This document shows, piece after piece, positions 11,586 through 22,015 of a stretch of DNA of 63,872 bases. Origin of the DNA: Euprymna scolopes (lineage: Eukaryota). Numbering within the stretch: position 1 is the stretch's first letter; each line of letters starts with the position of its first letter. The stretch lies in the NCBI GenBank assembly GCA_053919585.1, contig CM132820.1; one strand, 5' to 3'. The notes under the pieces were generated by a model. It did not search any database and was not told the DNA's origin. It worked only from the letters and a program-made list of their open reading frames with translations. Both the position numbers and the translations under genes were made by a program.

Positions 11586-12221
11586 CTACCTAGCTCTACG
11601 AATGTATTGAGCTCTGTTGAAGTAAATACTGAAAATTTACGCATAAAATTATATTTTCTTTCTTCCTTTATTATATTTACTTAAGGTGGATATTGAAAAT
11701 CATATCTATTCATATATTGAAAAGAAAACCAAGTGACAAGGTGCTTGCTGGCTATAATTATGTTTTAATATTATATTTTAGACGATATTTCGGAGCAATA
11801 TCTCTTCATCAAGTTATTGAGGACGAAGTTCGTTTTGATATTTTATATTCTCTATTTACTTGTATCTATTATTTCTGTATATTCTGTGCGTTCAGTGTTG
11901 ATTTTAACGGTGTTTTTTTTCGACTTTTAATCATATCAAACGGATATTTTAAAAGTAGAAATAAAACAATAAAAAAGGAAATTATTTTATTTCAAACGAA
12001 ATATGAAGTAAAATTTCATTTATGCCTTTTAACTAATTATGTTTTAAAACTTTTGAAATTTTAGATTGAAGACGATGTTGTCATTTTTATTTATTCTTGT
12101 GCTATTGCAAACTTTAAATATTTCCATTTTCTTTCAGCAAATTCTTTTCTTCGCCAAATCCTATTTCATTCCAATAAATGCAAACGAAACAAAAGTATTT
12201 GTTTTCCGAGGGACGTACATT

Positions 12222-12272
12222 TCTCTGATGAGTTTTGGTGGTATTCCGCTATTCAACGAAACACGTGTAAGA
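12222..12272 (+). ncRNA. Type I hammerhead ribozyme motif (family G), canonical
   Basis: tct-CTGATGA-GTT..TGGTGG(tatt)CCGCTA..AAC-GAAAC-ACGT-GTA-aga; all core nucleotides present; palindromic stem III ACACGTGT. Confidence 0.8.
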
Positions 12273-12385
12273 CATAATTCTTAAAAATATGAATAAAATA
12301 TTATAAGTAAGAAATAAGTACATATTCGGGTTTTGAAATGATAACTAACAACACAGACAGACAGACAGACAGACAGACACCCCCC

Positions 12386-12431
<46 letters not shown>

Positions 12432-12443
12432 TATGTATATATC

Positions 12444-12830
12444 CTACACTAATAATTCCCGAAAGGATGAAACACTAGTGTCTGTAGTATTTAATAATTA
12501 TTATAGTAAATAATTATGTCAGCCCCTGTAAAAAAACCTGTTTCTTTTTGTTTAGCACTTTCTGTAGAAATTAAGTCAGGCAATTTAACTCATATGTGCA
12601 GATCTTCATATAATGATTGGATCACTTTGACAGACATTTAAAAAACATTTAAAAATAAATGTTTAGATTTCAACAGTATTTCTCGCGGTTAACGGTAGCC
12701 GAATGGATTAGGTCCTTGCTAATGAAGCCTGAGATGGCTTCTGTTGCCGCGTTCGAATCTATCGACCGGTTTTAATCGTGACATCATGCACTGATGATTC
12801 CAGAAAAGATGAAACACTAGTGTCTGTAGG
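12444..12830 (+). mobile_element. Retrozyme-like unit (family H): hammerhead - spacer - tRNA-Ser-like head - hammerhead
   Basis: Hammerheads at 12444-12487 (core decayed to CTAATAA) and 12787-12829 (CTGATGA...GAAAC-ACTAGT-GTC); predicted cleavage sites after 12482 and 12824 are 342 nt apart; A box TAGCCGAATGG 12696-12706, B box GTTCGAATC 12751-12759. Confidence 0.75.
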
Positions 12831-12839
12831 TATTTAATC

Positions 12840-12905
<66 letters not shown>

Positions 12906-12934
12906 TATATATATATTAAGTTATGAAAATATAT

Positions 12935-13227
12935 ATGGCAATTAAGCTACACAGAATATTCCGCGTTTCATCCACGCTAAGATTCGTCAGGCGAAGAGTT
13001 GTGGTTGTTTCACGTTTTTATATATGCGCATTCTATTGAGTTTTTAGTTAGTCAATCAGATTCCTAGTTTACACTGCTCCATTCCTAATCAGTTAATAGG
13101 CAGGCACATACAGGACAAAGGCCCAGTTGACCTTGAGTTAACCCTTCCTTTGTGTTTTGTTTTTTTAGCGGGGACCGTAGATATCTAGTGATTTGACCTG
13201 TTTTAAACCTAGATGTAGTTAAATGTG

Positions 13228-13228
<1 letters not shown>
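12935..13228 (-). mobile_element. Penelope pLTR-like segment with TATA box and family E hammerhead
   Basis: Minus strand TATATAAAAA (~13015-13024) lies ~25 nt upstream of CTGACGA-ATCT(tagcgt)GGAT-GAAA-CGCGGAA(ta)TTCTGTG-TA-GC (12943-12992). Confidence 0.55.
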
Positions 13229-13280
<52 letters not shown>

Positions 13281-13297
13281 GTTATATATATATATAT

Positions 13298-13550
13298 ATG
13301 CACAGATCATCGTATAACGATTAGATCACTGTCTGACAGACGTAAAGAACATTTAAAACTAAAATGTTTAAATTCAACTTTATTTCACGCGATTAATGGT
13401 AGCTGAATGGATACGGTCTTTGCTAATCGAGCTAGCTATGGCTCATATTGCCGAGTCCGGATCTGTAAACTGGTGTTAATCGTGACACCCTGCACTGAGG
13501 ATTCCCGAAAGGATGAAACAATAGTCTGTATTTAATTATTATAGTAAAAA
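13298..13550 (+). mobile_element. Third, 5'-truncated copy of family H (tRNA-like head plus hammerhead 13491-13530)
   Basis: Colinear with 12594-12845; tgca-CTGAGGA-TTCC(cgaa)AGGAT-GAAAC-aata-GTC-tgta; flanked on both sides by (TTA)n tracts. Confidence 0.75.
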
Positions 13551-13580
13551 AATAATTATATATATATAAACGAAATCAGA

Positions 13581-13649
<69 letters not shown>

Positions 13650-13655
<6 letters not shown>

Positions 13656-15131
13656 TCTACTAGTTACATATGTGTCCTTTGTGTTAGTTTTATTTTTTGT
13701 CATGGTGTCCACTTTTTATTGTTTATTTTATTGTTGTTTTCATTGCTTTTATTTAATATTTTGTTATTATGTGCTTTAATTATAATCTCTAAATTTTCGC
13801 AGCAGCTGTATGATAACTTTAGGTTATTTTTATTGAAAATTTTGTGTAAGGACTTGGTTGCGGGGAAGTGCTTTTCGATTAGATCTAGAAATTTCTTGCC
13901 AAGTTTTGGTTTTAACATTTGATTTTATGGCGCCGTATACCAGATTATATTACTTTTTCTTCTATTTTTATTTTATTTTCATTGATGTTTTGTTACTTAT
14001 ATTTGATATCAATATTTTGTATCCACTATTTTGAGAGCTGTTTCGTAGATATTGATTGACCTGTCAAATACATTTTCATCGCTTGAGTTATTGGTGAGTC
14101 TACTTACGATCGAGTTAGGAATCGGTTTTATAATTGATGGTGAGTGATTGGACTTAGGGTTTACGTATATTGGATTAGCGTTATCTTTTAAGTAGGGTTA
14201 ATATGTGTTTTTATCTAAATTTAATGTAACGTCCGGGAAGTTTTTTTTATGTTAGGTAGTACGTCTATTTTTAGGCCTACTTTTTCATTTACTTGTGTAT
14301 GATTTTTATAAAATTATCTCACTTGACTTTGTTGGAGTCTTTTATTATAGCTAGTCCATAATCTCTATATAGGCCGATATCCGTTGTATCAAATATGTTT
14401 GTGTAGGTATATAGAATGAATAACCCCACAAGATCTGATGCCTCTGCAGAATCCAGAGCTCCCATCGCCAAATCAAAAGAATTTGTCATTTTAGTTTTTA
14501 TACATTGGTTATTGTTATTTACTAGAACTGATTTTCTACATTTTTTTAATCCATAGATATATCAGTGTGTGACTCGGCAAACTTCAGGGCAATGTTGAAA
14601 AGTTCTTAGGATATCGAGGGATGTCTATGATGTCGAACTGTATAAACGTACATTTATTTTTGTTTTCTATATTTTTAAACAAAGTGATTGCTTCGGCGGT
14701 ATTTGCCCACTGGTTTAATTGTAGGTCTTGTTTGATTTGTTTGTTTACTCTAGAAAGTATTGCTTTGCTAATTCTACCTATTTATTTGAGTTCTAGGGTT
14801 ATTATTGAAGTCATCTTTTGGCAAAATGTATGCTTCTCTAGGTTTCAATTTGCCAACTTTATCGCTATTTTTTAATTTATCGGTGATTTGTTTACTTTCA
14901 GTATTTATTATATCTATGTAGTCGCATTCGTTTGTATCCAGTTTTTTGTAGTTTTTTTTAAATGTTTCCTTTGATTAGTTTCTTATATTCTTGTTTATCG
15001 ATTTTATAAAAATGTCTAGTTTTATCTGCTTTTACAAAGATTTTATTAGAGTTATGTAATTTCCGTTGGAAATTTTTTATGTTGATTGTGAAATGCTAAA
15101 TTTTTAATTACGTTTAAAAGGTCATTTTCAA
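13650..15131 (-). mobile_element. Penelope-like retroelement RT pseudogene (Naiad-type), frameshifted, endonuclease missing
   Basis: Minus-strand motifs in order: FENDLLNVIKN, IFVKADKTRHFYKIDK, LNQWANT, FIQFDIID, FDLAMGALDSAEASDLVGLFIL, IGLYRDYGL (catalytic YRDD mutated), LGKKFLDLIEKHFP..LHKIFNKNNLKLSYSC, then a frameshifted CNCR before the (AAT)n tract. Confidence 0.88.
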
Positions 15132-15730: not shown

Positions 15731-17289
15731 TTTTCTATGTCAAAAACATCATATACTGTCTTAATCACCTCTACGCCTTCCTGTGGTGGTTCTGCTTGAT
15801 CCTCAGGGGGTGCGTTTCATTATTTGGTTCAGGTGTTTTTATGTTCAAATTTTGGCCCTGAATAATGTATATGACATTTCCGATTCTTCGTGAGATCGTG
15901 CCCAGTTCCTAAAAGGAAACGTTGTTCTTGAAATGCTTAAAATAAACTTTATAGTCGATTTCAACTGGGGGTGTGGCATCTGGTATTTAAGATGCATGAG
16001 CGAATGCTATACTGGCTAGCGTCGCTAACCACTATTATATCCAAATCCGGGTTAAAATGAGTTAGGAACAGTTTTGAGGTAAGGATCTTTTTATTTCTTG
16101 AAATGATGCCTGGCAATTTGATGTCCATTCCCAAGGTTTATCTTTCTTTAGTAATTGGTTAAAGGTTGCACACAGTTAGAGCATGTTGGGGATAAACCCT
16201 TGATAATAATTTACCAAGCCTAAAAAGCTTTGTAGTTGTGCTTTGTTTTTCAGTGCTAACTTCTTTTTAATAGCGGTCGCTATGTCCGGATCTGGGCGTC
16301 TGCCATCTTTATCAATGATATGTCCTAGGTATTTGATTTTTTGTAAAAAAAATTCACACTTGTCTTCTTTGACCATAAAACCATACTTTTGTATTCGCCT
16401 GATTACTTGTTTGCTATGGTTTGCGCATTCCTACTTGCTTTTTCTCCGCTATAATAATGTAAATATGCGATGGCGTTGTCAAGGTCGCCCAGCATGGTAT
16501 CCATGACTTGCTGTAATATAGCAGGTGCTACTTTGACTCCGAACGCGAGCCCTTTGTATCTGTACAAACCCCGATAGTCTATTTTTTATCTCCTCCACCA
16601 GGAAAAAAAGAAATGCAGTTTACTCTTTTCTTTATTCCATTTTTCAAACACCAAGCGGGAAATAATGATTATTTTCACACTATTTGAAATAATTGGGAAA
16701 AATACGTTTCAAAATAAAATGTTCACTTAACAATTTTAAGACGTTTGAGTTTTCTTTTTTTAGACAAAACGGAAACAGGACTATTCAAAAAAAAAAAAAA
16801 AAAAAAAGATAAAAACTAAAAAAAAAAATAAAATAAATATTAACCTCGTGTTTACCTTTAATTATGCTGTTTAACTGACACAAACATAAATGGTCTCATG
16901 AGCGCAAAATTGTTTTGATTTTTTCCTTTAGCATAAAAAAGTAAAAAAAAAGAAATGTATATTTTTCCAAGGGGGAAAACAATAGAGTACAATTTTTTTC
17001 TTTTTAGTCATGCAGCGAGAACAACAGCGACGAATTTTTTTAACACTCAACACAGTAAGATGATTAAGAATTTAATCTTATTTTTGTCCTTTTAGAGCCT
17101 TTGAAATGTACTTTTCCGGTATGATGGACAGACAATTTTTTCTTGTAAAAAGATTTTATTTACAGTTTTTCGTCTCGTGCTTGTCTTGTTCTGAATTCTT
17201 TTTTTTTAATTCGGGAATTGGGTTTTACGCGGTTAATTTTTTTAAGTCAATAATATTGTTATTCTTTCCCAAATGAAAAATATTCTTCC

Positions 17290-19642: not shown

Positions 19643-20553
19643 CGGGGGTGTCTAAAAATGTACTCACACTTTAACCCTTGCTAACATGCTGTCTTTTTTG
19701 TGTTGCAGGTGTGAGGTGTCAACCACAGCATGGTAGGAAATCAACTTAGCTTGGAAGAGAGGAAGGTTGTCTTGAAATGTTATTGGAAGACAGAAAACGC
19801 TATTGAAGTGCAAAGACGATTCAGAAGGGAATTCGCAAGACCACCACCAACGCGCCGGACCATTGCTCGCATCAAAAGAAATTTGAAGCAGATGGAACCA
19901 TCCAGAACGTCAACAAGAAACGTTCTGGACGACCTCGGACATCCACGAGCCCTGGAAAAGAAGAGAAGGTGCAGGAAACACTCTTTCGATCACCACAGAA
20001 ATCATTTCGACAAATTACTCGGGAAACCCACATCTCAAAAGATAGCATCCATCGCATCATGAAGCGTCTGCGCTGGAAATGCTACATTCCAACACTAATT
20101 AATGCTCTCAACGAAGACAATCCTGACCGGAGAGTCGAATTCTGTGAATGGTACCTGTCAAAATGTGCAGAAGATGCAGGGTTTCCACACAAAATTGTGT
20201 GGAGCGATGAAGCAACGTTTAAATTAAATGGCACCATTAATTGCCATAATTGCACGTACTGGAGTCCTATAAATCCTCATCTAACACTTGAACACCATGT
20301 AAACTTGCCAGGAGTAACAGTGTGGTGTGGGATATCCGCACTGGGCATCATAGGGTCATTTTTTATTAACGGAACTGTCACTAGTGAGAGATACCTTAAC
20401 TTGCTTCAGGAGTTTGTTGATCCACAAATTTCGGACATGATTCTTTAATCACATTTATCTTCTGTATTCGAAGCTATTCCATTTCACTGTATGTTCATAA
20501 ATAAAGGATTTCTCGTCATTCGAAGTGTGAGTACATTTTTTTGAGACACCCTG
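19643..20553 (+). mobile_element. Tc1/mariner-superfamily DNA transposon (rosa/DD41D-like), 911 bp, deletion derivative
   Basis: ~30-bp TIRs (CGGGGGTGTCTAAAAATGTACTCACACTT / AAGTGTGAGTACATTTTTTTGAGACACCCTG) with TA on both sides. Confidence 0.92.
19730..20448 (+). pseudogene. Transposase pseudogene (one frameshift near 19875, C-terminal DDE/D half deleted)
   Basis: HTH region [24 protein letters not shown], first catalytic Asp motif [33 protein letters not shown]; stops before the second Asp motif. Confidence 0.88.
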
Positions 20554-21973: not shown

Positions 21974-22015
21974 CACCTGATGAAGGCTGGAGGGCAAAAC
22001 GGCCGAAACGTTGTG
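21974..22015 (+). ncRNA. Minimal type I hammerhead motif (family I)
   Basis: cac-CTGATGA-a-GGCTG(gagggcaaaa)CGGCC-GAAAC-GTT-gtg; stem III is the loopless palindrome AACGTT, as in dimeric Penelope-type hammerheads. Confidence 0.7.

What the first reader, a model, noticed from the sequence alone, without database searches (positions are those of the whole stretch)
12444..13550. tRNA-Ser(GCU)-headed retrozyme: 342-nt ribozyme-to-ribozyme unit with internal Pol III promoter
Seen: two same-family hammerheads with GUC sites 342 nt apart and a third copy downstream. Copies 2 and 3 are each preceded by GGTAGC(C/T)GAATGG...TTGCTAAT...variable-arm hairpin...B box. The hairpin differs yet still pairs (GAAGCC/GGCTTC vs GAGCTA/TGGCTC). 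Known: the head resembles eukaryotic tRNA-Ser(GCU); metazoan non-LTR retrozymes are few-hundred-nt tandem units that yield circular RNAs; schistosome Sm-alpha combines a tRNA-derived promoter with a hammerhead. Inference: a self-transcribing, self-cleaving, probably circRNA-forming SINE/retrozyme hybrid mobilised by a Penelope-like RT such as the adjacent one. This is my best candidate for an undescribed system. Copy 1 has a dead core, so this particular locus may be inactive.
Basis: partly seen in the sequence, partly recalled or inferred. Interest (0 to 1): 0.88.

Follow-up and report, generated by a model that had tools for sequence, protein, structure and literature searches.

The report
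Hammerhead retrozyme with tRNA-derived module
This is one locus of a very abundant non-coding mobile element whose 342-base unit runs from one hammerhead ribozyme to the next and carries a decayed serine-type tRNA piece with Pol III promoter boxes; it is a new variant of the known retrozyme and Sm-alpha-type elements, not a new kind of system.

Summary
Hammerhead (HHR) GUC sites lie at 12482, 12824 and 13526, and the first two are exactly 342 nt apart. A tRNA-like stretch sits just 5' of HHR2 and HHR3.

Copy 1 plus copy 2 form one insertion of about 1.1 units. Copy 3 is a separate, 5'-truncated insertion of a sister subfamily (77% identity).

Genome-wide, the majority HHR 34-mer has 34,577 matches at up to 3 mismatches (control 0). 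In 56 copies:
- The 3' end is fixed 35-36 nt past GUC (48/56), usually abutting (TA)n.
- 5' ends are scattered; 22/56 copies (14/27 in the sample unbiased for length) reach a second HHR.

This is the partial-tandem, tailed, (TA)n-targeting style of Penelope-like elements (PLEs), so the element is a non-LTR retrozyme.

The tRNA module is derived from a class II tRNA. It matches Ser/Leu tRNAs of this genome better than 1500 random genomic windows do, and Ser(GCU) fits best. Its A-to-B box spacing is kept. It is internal, though, not a 5' head, and no longer a cloverleaf.

Pol III transcription, self-cleavage and circular RNA remain unproven; polyA RNA-seq reads were uninformative. The neighbouring PLE-like RT gene is a decayed bystander on the opposite strand. 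This window's locus lacks a promoter upstream of its dead HHR1 and is probably inert.

The scan noted this family elsewhere in this genome (s1-244825 and others).

The parts
12441..12482 (+). Copy 1: 5'-truncated upstream partial unit (unit positions about 301-342). It consists of the 3' part of a hammerhead with a dead core (CTAATAA at 12449-12455), and its GUC ends at 12482. It is preceded by a (CA)n(TA)n microsatellite.
   Evidence: BLAST 12441-12482 = unit 301-342, 86%
12483..12824 (+). One complete 342-nt ribozyme-to-ribozyme unit, running from the base after GUC of HHR1 to the C of GUC of HHR2. It is 87% identical to the family majority sequence and carries a T5 run at unit positions about 63-67 that the majority sequence lacks.
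12483..12517 (+). AT-rich 35-nt segment immediately 3' of the cleavage site. In 48 of 56 family copies the element ends at the end of this segment, so it is the PLE-type 'tail'.
12689..12778 (+). Module derived from a class II tRNA (Ser(GCU)-like). Its parts are the A box (12696-12706), an anticodon-loop relic TTGCTAAT (12716-12723), the variable-arm hairpin (12724-12741) and the B box (12750-12760). ARAGORN and the Rfam tRNA model do not call it.
12785..12830 (+). HHR2: type I hammerhead with an intact core. Its parts are helix I (12785-12790 with 12825-12830), CUGAUGA (12791-12797), a short helix II with a U-U pair at 10.1/11.1, GAAA, and the palindromic helix III ACACUAGUGU. The cleavage site is after C12824.
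   Evidence: (Rfam Hammerhead_1, 16.1 bits, E 0.25, below the gathering score of 34)
12825..12845 (+). Start of the 3' tail after HHR2. It runs into a (TA)n tract (12844-12900), so the element ends here.
13296..13559 (+). Copy 3: a separate, 5'-truncated insertion (unit positions about 110-342 plus tail) of a sister subfamily. It carries an A box (13400-13410), a decayed B box (13454-13464), HHR3 with the core CTGAGGA (13495-13501), a shortened helix III, GUC at 13524-13526 and a tail at 13527-13559. It is flanked by (ATT)n and (TA)n.
13700..15100 (-). Context, not part of the element: a frameshifted remnant of an abundant RT plus GIY-YIG-like (PLE-like) retrotransposon on the opposite strand.

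Best explanation
The region holds two insertions of a high-copy, non-coding, non-LTR retrozyme family that is probably mobilised by Penelope-like elements (PLEs).

**Unit anatomy.** The unit is about 342 nt with 37% GC. In order it contains:
- a 35-36-nt AT-rich tail segment;
- about 170 nt of body;
- a roughly 90-nt relic of a class II tRNA (best match Ser-GCU) that keeps A and B boxes at tRNA-like spacing;
- directly after that, a dimer-type type I hammerhead.

**Shown.**
- The unit and its abundance.
- The fixed 3' end 35-36 nt past the cleavage site.
- The scattered 5' ends, which often reach into or past a second hammerhead.
- The (TA)n association.
- The tRNA ancestry of the module.

**Inferred.**
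- A copy of at least about 1.5 units has a promoter module upstream of a complete HHR-unit-HHR stretch. About 11% of copies are that long.
- Pol III would transcribe such a copy from the internal A and B boxes.
- The two hammerheads would pair through their palindromic helix III and cut out a 342-nt monomer.
- A tRNA ligase would circularise the monomer.
- A PLE reverse transcriptase, primed from a nicked (TA)n target on the AU-rich tail segment, would copy the circle or a multimer for about 0.4 to 2 turns.

The window's own locus (1.1 units, dead HHR1, no promoter upstream of it, a T5 run) is a dead-on-arrival copy.
For: **Family and unit.**
- The 325-nt query matches end to end at 85-89% in all 40 scored loci, out of at least 3600 candidates. 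Partial units abut several of them.
- The majority HHR 34-mer occurs 34,577 times at up to 3 mismatches; the reversed control gives 0.

**Ends of copies.**
- 48 of 56 copies end at unit position 30-35.
- Lengths run from 138 to 707 nt.
- 22 of 56 copies are at least 412 nt long and so include a second HHR. In the 3'-anchored sample, which is unbiased for length, this is 14 of 27.
- (TA)4+ lies at the 3' junction in 44 of 56 copies and at the 5' junction in 28 of 56, against 2.3% background.
- These traits match published PLE traits: a 30-40-bp tail, partial tandems and (TA)n targets (PMC8557442).

**tRNA module.**
- Its local alignment scores against this genome's Ser and Leu tRNAs are 31-40. 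None of 1500 random genomic windows reaches those scores.
- A tRNA-Thr control scores 18, reached by 52 of 1500 windows. Other parts of the unit score at null level.
- The A-to-B box start spacing is 54 nt, against 53 nt in the genome's own tRNA-Ser(GCU) (sequences).
- TGCTAAT and TTCGAATCT(C)ATC are shared specifically with Ser(GCU).

**Hints of Pol III transcription.**
- The majority unit has no TTTT but five AAAA runs (P = 0.06 by shuffling).
- RNA-seq reads of the family show a 3-6:1 strand bias.
- A second, unrelated HHR family in the window also has a B-box-like stretch just upstream of its HHR (6481-6587).

**Hammerhead.**
- All core positions are present.
- 93% of cells pair in the three helices, against 24-49% when the partners are slid.
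- Rfam gives Hammerhead_HH9 22.9 bits (E 0.0012) on a majority-type copy.
- The palindromic helix III duplex has -13.4 kcal/mol, while the monomeric HHR fold has only -3.9 kcal/mol. That makes it dimer-type, like PLE and newt HHRs (PMC4209133).

**PLEs in the genome.**
- An RT plus GIY-YIG-like family gives 24,665 first-look hits and ends in (TA)n.
- Its look-alike clusters carry RVT_1 and GIY-YIG.
Against: **No functional evidence.**
- In three polyA RNA-seq runs, reads cross both GUC sites with no pile-up of starts or ends there.
- 82-84% of the reads fit the reference only partly, as expected for scattered read-through of old copies.
- Junction-spanning reads are also encoded by DNA tandems, so they do not show circles.
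- The strandedness of the libraries is unknown.

**Hammerhead weaknesses.**
- It scores below Rfam gathering thresholds.
- It has a non-canonical U-U pair at 10.1/11.1.
- It shows no covariation.
- Thermodynamically it prefers an inactive hairpin.

**tRNA module weaknesses.**
- It is not a cloverleaf: the anticodon stem is lost and the T stem is broken. ARAGORN and the Rfam tRNA model do not detect it.
- Its A box departs from the consensus at one position.
- 5' ends are not enriched at the predicted start site.

**Other points.**
- The absence of TTTT is only marginally unusual.
- No array longer than about 2.1 units was seen in 56 copies.
- The family is old: about 9-10% divergence from the majority sequence.
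- No sequence similarity was found between the element's 3' end and the 3' end of the PLE-like family examined or a second HHR family (z 0.7-2.1). The partner element is therefore not identified.
Confidence: 0.55

Rival explanations
1. Ordinary PLE-dependent SINE with no circular stage. Linear transcripts, from Pol III or from read-through, are reverse transcribed. The partial tandems are made at integration by template switching of the PLE reverse transcriptase, as for PLE pseudo-LTRs. The hammerhead is merely a borrowed PLE 3'-end module needed for recognition.
For: - PLEs themselves insert as partial tandems with a 30-40-bp tail (PMC8557442).
- The 3' end is fixed, and no array above about 2.1 units was seen.
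- No read-end pile-up occurs at the GUC sites.
- The monomeric HHR fold is weak.
Against: - About 170 nt of every full copy lies upstream of the only promoter-like module. A single-unit Pol III transcript therefore cannot be the template.
- In the 3'-anchored sample, copy lengths cluster just above one unit: 10 of 27 fall within 343-433 nt, against about 5 expected if lengths were uniform. That fits a circular or unit-length template.
- Known metazoan retrozymes with the same layout do make circles (PMC7229834).
Confidence: 0.3
2. The tRNA-like module is not a promoter. It is either a dead relic of the SINE from which the family arose, or a structural or tRNA-mimic element: part of the long hairpin predicted for the monomer, a ligase or RNase P/Z handle, or a block to reverse transcription. 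Transcription would come from read-through of host genes.
For: - The cloverleaf is lost, and ARAGORN and the Rfam tRNA model do not call the module.
- In the predicted monomer fold, the A-box and B-box regions pair with each other in a long hairpin (MFE z = -3.4).
- Most RNA reads continue into unrelated sequence.
- A published review states that metazoan retrozymes seem to lack promoters (PMC7761336).
- 5' ends cluster at unit positions 285-325, just 3' of the module.
Against: - The A and B boxes and their spacing are the best-kept tRNA features, while the stems decayed.
- There is no TTTT on the sense strand.
- RNA reads are strand-biased.
- B-box-like sequence recurs next to an unrelated HHR in the same window, and in many other scan notes that are unchecked.
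Confidence: 0.2
3. A local tandem repeat or segmental duplication (satellite-like) with chance hammerhead-like and tRNA-like motifs.
For: The region is full of microsatellites, and a 36-bp satellite fills 26567-63872.
Against: - Tens of thousands of dispersed copies lie on all large contigs, with a common 3' end.
- The motif counts are far above chance.
Confidence: 0.01

Closest known systems
Metazoan non-LTR retrozymes (Cervera and de la Pena 2020, PMC7229834; Li, Clavereau and Pollet 2026 preprint, 10.64898/2026.07.22.740005)
   Same: - The unit is non-coding, has low GC (37%) and falls within the 170-400-nt range.
- Each unit carries a type I hammerhead.
- Head-to-tail repeats let a monomer be excised between two ribozymes.
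- The family co-exists with PLEs.
- The helix III is dimer-type and palindromic, as in amphibian retrozymes.
   Different: - It carries an internal tRNA-derived A/B-box module. Published accounts report no promoter in metazoan retrozymes (PMC7761336), and neither paper mentions tRNA-like parts.
- The copies seen here are partial tandems of at most about 2.1 units with a fixed 3' tail in (TA)n, rather than long arrays.
- Circular RNA is not shown.
Sm-alpha / Sj-alpha SINE-like elements of Schistosoma (Ferbeyre et al. 1998, cited from memory; PMC2770079 reports that tRNAscan calls tRNA-Gln-like heads in them)
   Same: - A tRNA-related, Pol III-type part is combined with a hammerhead ribozyme in a repeat of a few hundred nt.
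- The repeat is dispersed, partly tandem and present in very high copy number.
   Different: - The host phylum is different, and so is the parent tRNA (class II Ser-type here, against Gln-like).
- The hammerhead here is dimer-type with a U-U pair at 10.1/11.1, whereas Sm-alpha's is canonical and efficient.
- No sequence comparison could be run here, so any relation is by design, not shown by homology.
Pseudo-LTR and tail architecture of Penelope-like elements (Craig et al. 2021, PMC8557442; Cervera and de la Pena 2014, PMC4209133)
   Same: - Partial tandem insertions.
- A 30-40-bp tail.
- A (TA)n insertion bias.
- A minimal or dimer-type hammerhead near the 3' end.
   Different: - There is no ORF.
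- No similarity was detected to the 3' end of the abundant RT plus GIY-YIG-like family examined.
- A tRNA-derived module is present.
Newt/salamander satellite 2 (Epstein and Gall 1987; now counted among the retrozymes)
   Same: - A unit of about 330 nt.
- A dimer-dependent hammerhead with a palindromic loop 3.
- Its own promoter inside the repeat (from memory: an snRNA-type promoter).
   Different: - The promoter type here would be a Pol III type 2 (tRNA-like) promoter.
- The organisation is dispersed partial tandems rather than satellite arrays.

Membership tests
Type I hammerhead ribozyme | Conserved catalytic core: C3 U4 G5 A6 N7 G8 A9, G12 A13 A14, the A15.1-U16.1 pair and H17 | tested here: met
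   - Present in copy 2, in copy 3 (N7 = G) and in the family majority sequence.
- Not met in copy 1 (CTAATAA).
- 41 of 56 copies keep at least one intact core motif.
Type I hammerhead ribozyme | Three helices around the core, with helix I open-ended | tested here: met
   - Helix I has 6 bp. Helix II has 3 bp plus a U-U pair at 10.1/11.1. Helix III has 3-4 bp and is palindromic.
- 93% of cells pair, against 24-49% when the partners are slid. There is no covariation.
Type I hammerhead ribozyme | Reaches the Rfam gathering score | tested here: not met
   - Hammerhead_1: 16.1 bits against 34.
- Hammerhead_HH9: 22.9 bits against 52, E 0.0012.
- From my own knowledge, not checked here, minimal PLE-type hammerheads often fall below these thresholds.
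Type I hammerhead ribozyme | Self-cleavage after H17 | not testable with these tools
   PolyA RNA reads show no pile-up of ends at the sites. That is a weak negative, because cleaved fragments would lack polyA tails.
Metazoan non-LTR retrozyme | Non-coding unit of 170-400 nt and low GC, with one type I HHR per unit | tested here: met
   The unit is 342 nt with 37% GC and one HHR per unit.
Metazoan non-LTR retrozyme | Head-to-tail repeats of two or more units | tested here: inconclusive
   - 22 of 56 copies span two HHR sites.
- One copy has two full units.
- None exceeds about 2.1 units.
Metazoan non-LTR retrozyme | Expressed as small circular RNA cut at the HHR sites | tested here: inconclusive
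   Family reads are present in RNA-seq and cross the junction, but DNA tandems encode the same joint. No ends were seen at GUC, and only polyA libraries were available.
Metazoan non-LTR retrozyme | Co-existence with autonomous PLEs | tested here: met
   - An abundant RT plus GIY-YIG-like family is present.
- Its look-alike clusters carry RVT_1 and GIY-YIG.
- Pfam itself gave no hit, so PLE membership of that family rests on motifs and look-alikes.
tRNA-derived SINE | tRNA-related region with A and B boxes | tested here: met
   Significant similarity to the genome's own class II tRNAs, with box spacing of 54 nt against 53 nt.
tRNA-derived SINE | The tRNA-related region is the 5' head, and copies start at it | tested here: not met
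   - The module lies at unit positions about 205-296.
- Only 3 of 56 copies start within 190-210, against 3.4 expected by chance.
- Most copies carry about 170 nt or more upstream of it.
tRNA-derived SINE | The 3' tail is shared with an autonomous partner | tested here: inconclusive
   No similarity was found to the 3' end of the one RT-EN family examined or to a second HHR family. Other PLE families were not examined.
Sm-alpha-type SINE-like element | Sequence homology to Sm-alpha or Sj-alpha | not tested
   No Sm-alpha sequence was available through the tools. The resemblance is one of design only.

The most novel reading that the evidence does not exclude
A self-transcribing retrozyme. A tRNA-Ser-derived internal Pol III promoter drives a tandem of at least 1.5 units. 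Its dimer-type hammerheads then release a 342-nt RNA that is circularised and copied by a Penelope-like reverse transcriptase into (TA)n tracts.

If true, this would supply the promoter that metazoan retrozymes are said to lack. It would also define a Pol III SINE class mobilised by PLEs in molluscs, present as several convergent tRNA-plus-hammerhead families in one genome.
Probability: 0.35. Interest if true: 0.7.

Novelty: new variant of a known kind. Interest (0 to 1): 0.5.

Why it matters
How animal retrozymes are transcribed is an open point. A 2020 review says they seem to have no promoter and depend on read-through transcription (PMC7761336).

This family has tens of thousands of copies and keeps tRNA-type A and B boxes at native spacing right next to its ribozyme. 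That makes the question directly testable.

The family also links three lines of work that are usually treated separately:
- tRNA-derived SINEs;
- Sm-alpha-type ribozyme repeats;
- PLE-dependent retrozymes.

It offers a concrete model in which only copies of at least about 1.5 units can act as sources.

For annotation, the practical point is that roughly 35,000 hammerhead sites and tRNA-like pieces in this genome belong to one repeat family. They should not be called as ribozyme genes or tRNA pseudogenes.

Tried and rejected
- **Rfam, whole window at gathering thresholds.** Only a 5S rRNA was found.
- **ARAGORN and the Rfam tRNA model.** Neither found anything on the window copy or on a majority-type copy.
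- **Strict tRNA-Ser pattern in the genome.** No match. An Rfam tRNA search of the genome returned only a giant tRNA-Thr/Lys array. Real Ser and Leu tRNAs were finally found with an 18-mer.
- **Pfam.** No hits on the minus-strand ORF pieces, on the 666-aa RT-EN ORF or on its homologues. A profile search of PDB sequences also gave none. PLE membership of that family therefore rests on motifs read by eye and on Atlas look-alikes.
- **Shared 3' end.** Comparing the retrozyme 3' part with another HHR family that lies beside the RT-EN element gave no significant similarity.
- **Covariation in the HHR.** None was found, as expected for neutrally decaying copies of one master.
- **RNA read-end analysis.** Uninformative in polyA libraries.
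- **Satellite or segmental-duplication reading.** Rejected.
- **Ferbeyre et al. 1998.** The paper is not held in the library.
Full report
**Observation.** Reading window 12000-14200 confirms three same-type hammerhead (HHR) motifs on the + strand.
- Their GUC triplets end at 12482, 12824 and 13526, and the first two are exactly 342 nt apart.
- Copy 1 has CTAATAA in place of CUGAUGA, so its core is dead. Copy 2 has an intact core. Copy 3 has CUGAGGA and a shortened helix III.
- The motif CTGANGA..GAAACANTAGT occurs twice in the window, against 0.00 expected from shuffles.
- Upstream of HHR2 and HHR3 lie an A-box-like TAGC(C/T)GAATGG, TTGCTAAT, a 5-6-bp hairpin and, in copy 2, CGTTCGAATCT.
- Between copies 2 and 3 the hairpin shows one double change (A-T to G-C) and one wobble change.
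- Copies 2 and 3 are only 77% identical over 230 nt.

**What the unit is.** A search of the whole 5.9-Gb genome with 12521-12845 returned at least 3600 first-look candidates.
- All 40 scored hits matched the whole 325-nt query at 85-89% identity, and several had a partial unit abutting upstream.
- The stretch between HHR1 and HHR2 is therefore entirely element sequence, and 342 nt is the true repeat unit.
- The majority HHR 34-mer occurs 34,577 times at up to 3 mismatches, spread evenly over both strands; the reversed control gives 0.
- From memory, 46 large contigs fits a decapodiform cephalopod; the highest-numbered large contig seen among the hits was C46.
- RNA runs labelled 'mollusc metagenome' hold the family's words.
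- Together these suggest a cephalopod-like mollusc, but this is inference only.

**Anatomy of copies.** I analysed 56 copies.
- 29 came from the full-length search.
- 27 came from a search anchored on the last 108 nt, which does not select on length.

*3' ends.*
- The 3' end lies at unit position 30-35 in 48 of 56 copies. That is 35-36 nt past the cleavage site.
- It is followed by (TA)4+ in 44 of 56 copies.
- The 5' junction also abuts (TA)4+ in 28 of 56 copies. Background in the window is 2.3%.

*5' ends and lengths.*
- 5' ends are spread over the whole unit.
- Lengths run from 138 to 707 nt.
- 22 of 56 copies reach a second HHR (14 of 27 in the anchored sample).
- About 11% are at least 1.5 units long.
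- None exceeds about 2.1 units.

A fixed tail of 30-40 bp, partial tandems and (TA)n targets are the published hallmarks of PLE insertions (PMC8557442). A type I HHR in every 170-400-nt low-GC unit is the definition of metazoan non-LTR retrozymes (PMC7229834). In the window, copy 1 plus copy 2 (about 12441-12845) is one such insertion of about 1.1 units. Copy 3 is a separate insertion, truncated at unit position about 110. It belongs to a sister subfamily with at least 4171 candidates.

**The tRNA-like module.** ARAGORN and the Rfam tRNA model do not detect it, in the window copy or in a majority-type copy. I therefore fetched real tRNA genes of this genome and aligned them to unit positions 200-300.
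- Scores are 31-40 for Ser(GCU), Ser(AGA), Ser(UGA) and Leu(UAA). None of 1500 random genomic windows reaches them.
- A tRNA-Thr control scores 18, reached by 52 of 1500 windows.
- The other two thirds of the unit score at null level.
- Shared blocks are GGTGGCCGA(A/G)TGG (A box), TGCTAAT (the Ser-GCU anticodon loop) and GTTCGAATCT(C)ATC (B box and 3' T arm, specific to Ser-GCU).
- The A-to-B box start spacing is 54 nt, against 53 nt in the genuine gene.
- The anticodon stem is lost and the T stem is broken.
- In the predicted monomer fold the two box regions pair with each other in a long hairpin (-87.4 kcal/mol, z = -3.4).

The module is therefore a class II tRNA derivative, best assigned to Ser(GCU). 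It is internal, at unit positions about 205-296. Copies do not begin at it: 3 of 56 5' ends lie within 190-210, against 3.4 expected by chance.

**The ribozyme.**
- The majority sequence has every core nucleotide, a 6-bp open helix I, a 3-bp helix II closed by a non-canonical U-U pair at 10.1/11.1, and the palindromic helix III ACACUAGUGU.
- 93% of helix cells are paired across 65 sites, against 24-49% when the partners are slid. There is no covariation, as expected for decaying copies of one master.
- Rfam scores are sub-threshold: 16.1 bits for Hammerhead_1 and 22.9 bits for Hammerhead_HH9.
- The canonical monomer fold has only -3.9 kcal/mol, against -13.0 for an inactive hairpin. Two copies can form a 10-bp helix III duplex of -13.4 kcal/mol.
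- This is the dimer-dependent design described for newt, PLE and amphibian retrozyme HHRs (PMC4209133, PMC7229834).

**Transcription and RNA.** Two hints point to Pol III.
- The majority unit has no TTTT but five AAAA runs (P = 0.06).
- A second, unrelated HHR family in the window also has a B-box-like stretch just before its HHR.

I laid three polyA raw-read RNA-seq runs and one RNA contig set on a 1.36-unit natural copy.
- 775-1200 reads per run matched at 85% identity or more.
- There is a 3-6:1 strand bias, but the libraries' strandedness is unknown.
- 82-84% of the reads run on into unlike sequence.
- No pile-up of starts or ends occurs at either GUC site.
- A few reads show unit-to-unit continuity, but DNA tandems encode the same joint.

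Expression in some form is therefore shown. Cleavage, circles and Pol III are not. PolyA libraries are the wrong material for this test.

**The neighbouring 'Penelope-like RT'.**
- The minus strand of 13700-15100 holds frameshifted pieces of a very abundant family (24,665 first-look hits).
- A better copy (L113) has a 666-aa ORF. Read by eye, it shows RT motifs, a CX..C linker and a GIY-YIG-like C-terminus, and it ends in (TA)n.
- Pfam and PDB sequence searches gave nothing.
- Its look-alike clusters carry RVT_1 plus GIY-YIG, which is the PLE combination.
- In the window it lies on the opposite strand and is decayed, so it is a bystander.
- Its 3' UTR shows no HHR, and no significant similarity to the retrozyme's 3' part was found. 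The actual partner element is not identified.

**Mechanism proposed (inferred).**
1. A copy of at least about 1.5 units has the promoter module upstream of a complete HHR-unit-HHR stretch.
2. Pol III starts upstream of the A box and transcribes through both ribozymes. The unit contains no terminator.
3. The two HHRs pair through helix III and release a 342-nt RNA.
4. A tRNA ligase of the RtcB type circularises it, as shown for other retrozymes (PMC7229834).
5. A PLE endonuclease nicks a (TA)n tract.
6. The AU-rich tail segment anneals to the nick, and reverse transcription proceeds for 0.4 to 2 turns.
7. The second junction often forms by (TA) microhomology again.

In the anchored sample, copy lengths cluster just above one unit: 10 of 27 fall within 343-433 nt, against about 5 expected. 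This fits a unit-length or circular template, but it is weak evidence.

The window's locus has a dead HHR1, no promoter upstream of it and a T5 run, so it should be inert.

**Comparison and novelty.** The closest known kinds are:
- metazoan non-LTR retrozymes;
- newt satellite 2.

The new points are:
- a class II tRNA-derived A/B-box module inside a retrozyme unit. This is of interest because reviews state that metazoan retrozymes seem to lack promoters (PMC7761336);
- the host lineage;
- the clear (TA)n-targeted, fixed-tail, partial-tandem census.

The scan had already noted the same design many times in this genome. One follow-up on the same chromosome (s1-244825) reached the same verdict: a new example of a known design. 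I rate it a new variant of a known kind, interest 0.5.

**Limits.**
- The copy samples are small and drawn from the best-scoring candidates.
Subfamily comparison, which would best test constraint on the boxes and the ribozyme, could not be done.
- No step of the RNA life cycle was observed.

Noticed in passing
window 26567-63872: A 36-bp satellite array of at least 1036 copies, 95% matching, runs to the end of the window. It explains the giant multi-frame ORFs listed on the minus strand.
   Followed up: partly
window 12937-13215 (HHR on minus strand at 12965-12990); also 6882-7043 and L113:1545-1690, 4256-4512, 5234-5312: A second hammerhead family of about 250 nt has the core CTGACGAATCC..GGATGAAAC and a palindromic helix III (GAATATTC). 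It ends in a short tail plus (TA)n. In L113 and in the window it lies just downstream of the RT-EN element on the same strand, and in L113 it also lies inverted at that element's 5' end. It may therefore be that element's terminal (pseudo-LTR) part rather than an independent element.
   Followed up: partly
window 12205-12270 (+): A further hammerhead-like motif with a canonical G10.1-C11.1 pair, a long two-part helix II and the palindromic helix III ACACGTGT (CTGATGAG..CGAAACACGTGTA). It belongs to a different family from the finding.
   Followed up: no
window 6481-6587 (+), cut by a masked N stretch at 6588: Another family has a B-box-like GATTTCGAATCTCGC 19 nt upstream of a hammerhead-like motif (CTGATGAGTCGTAGACGACGAAG..GTC; the fourth base after GAA, position 15.1, is G rather than the canonical A). 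This is a second tRNA-like plus HHR pairing in the same window.
   Followed up: partly
window 967-996, 5204-5233 (+), 3929-3967 (-), 21977-22009 (+): More CTGANGA..GAAAC motifs from other families. Together the window has 9 such motifs, against 0.07 expected.
   Followed up: no
window 1495-1610 (+): A full-length 5S rRNA match (66.3 bits). Whether it is a gene or a 5S-derived SINE was not checked.
   Followed up: no
G000:C11:1.68-2.16 Mb (loci L061-L090): A huge array of tRNA genes, mostly tRNA-Thr(UGU) with some Thr(AGU), Thr(CGU) and Lys(UUU). ARAGORN called hundreds of them in the (overlapping) fetched pieces. In addition, the Ser-type 18-mer GGCCGAGTGGTTAAGGCG has 3404 matches genome-wide, including long arrays on C7.
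   Followed up: no
window 16176-16376 (-) and 19730-20448 (+): A Ty3/gypsy-type pol fragment and a mariner/Tc1-like transposase fragment, both identified by eye from the ORF translations.
   Followed up: no
window 11049-11281: A long, nearly perfect inverted repeat (arms of about 100 nt) that ends in (TA)n. An earlier scan note reads it as a hammerhead variant.
   Followed up: no
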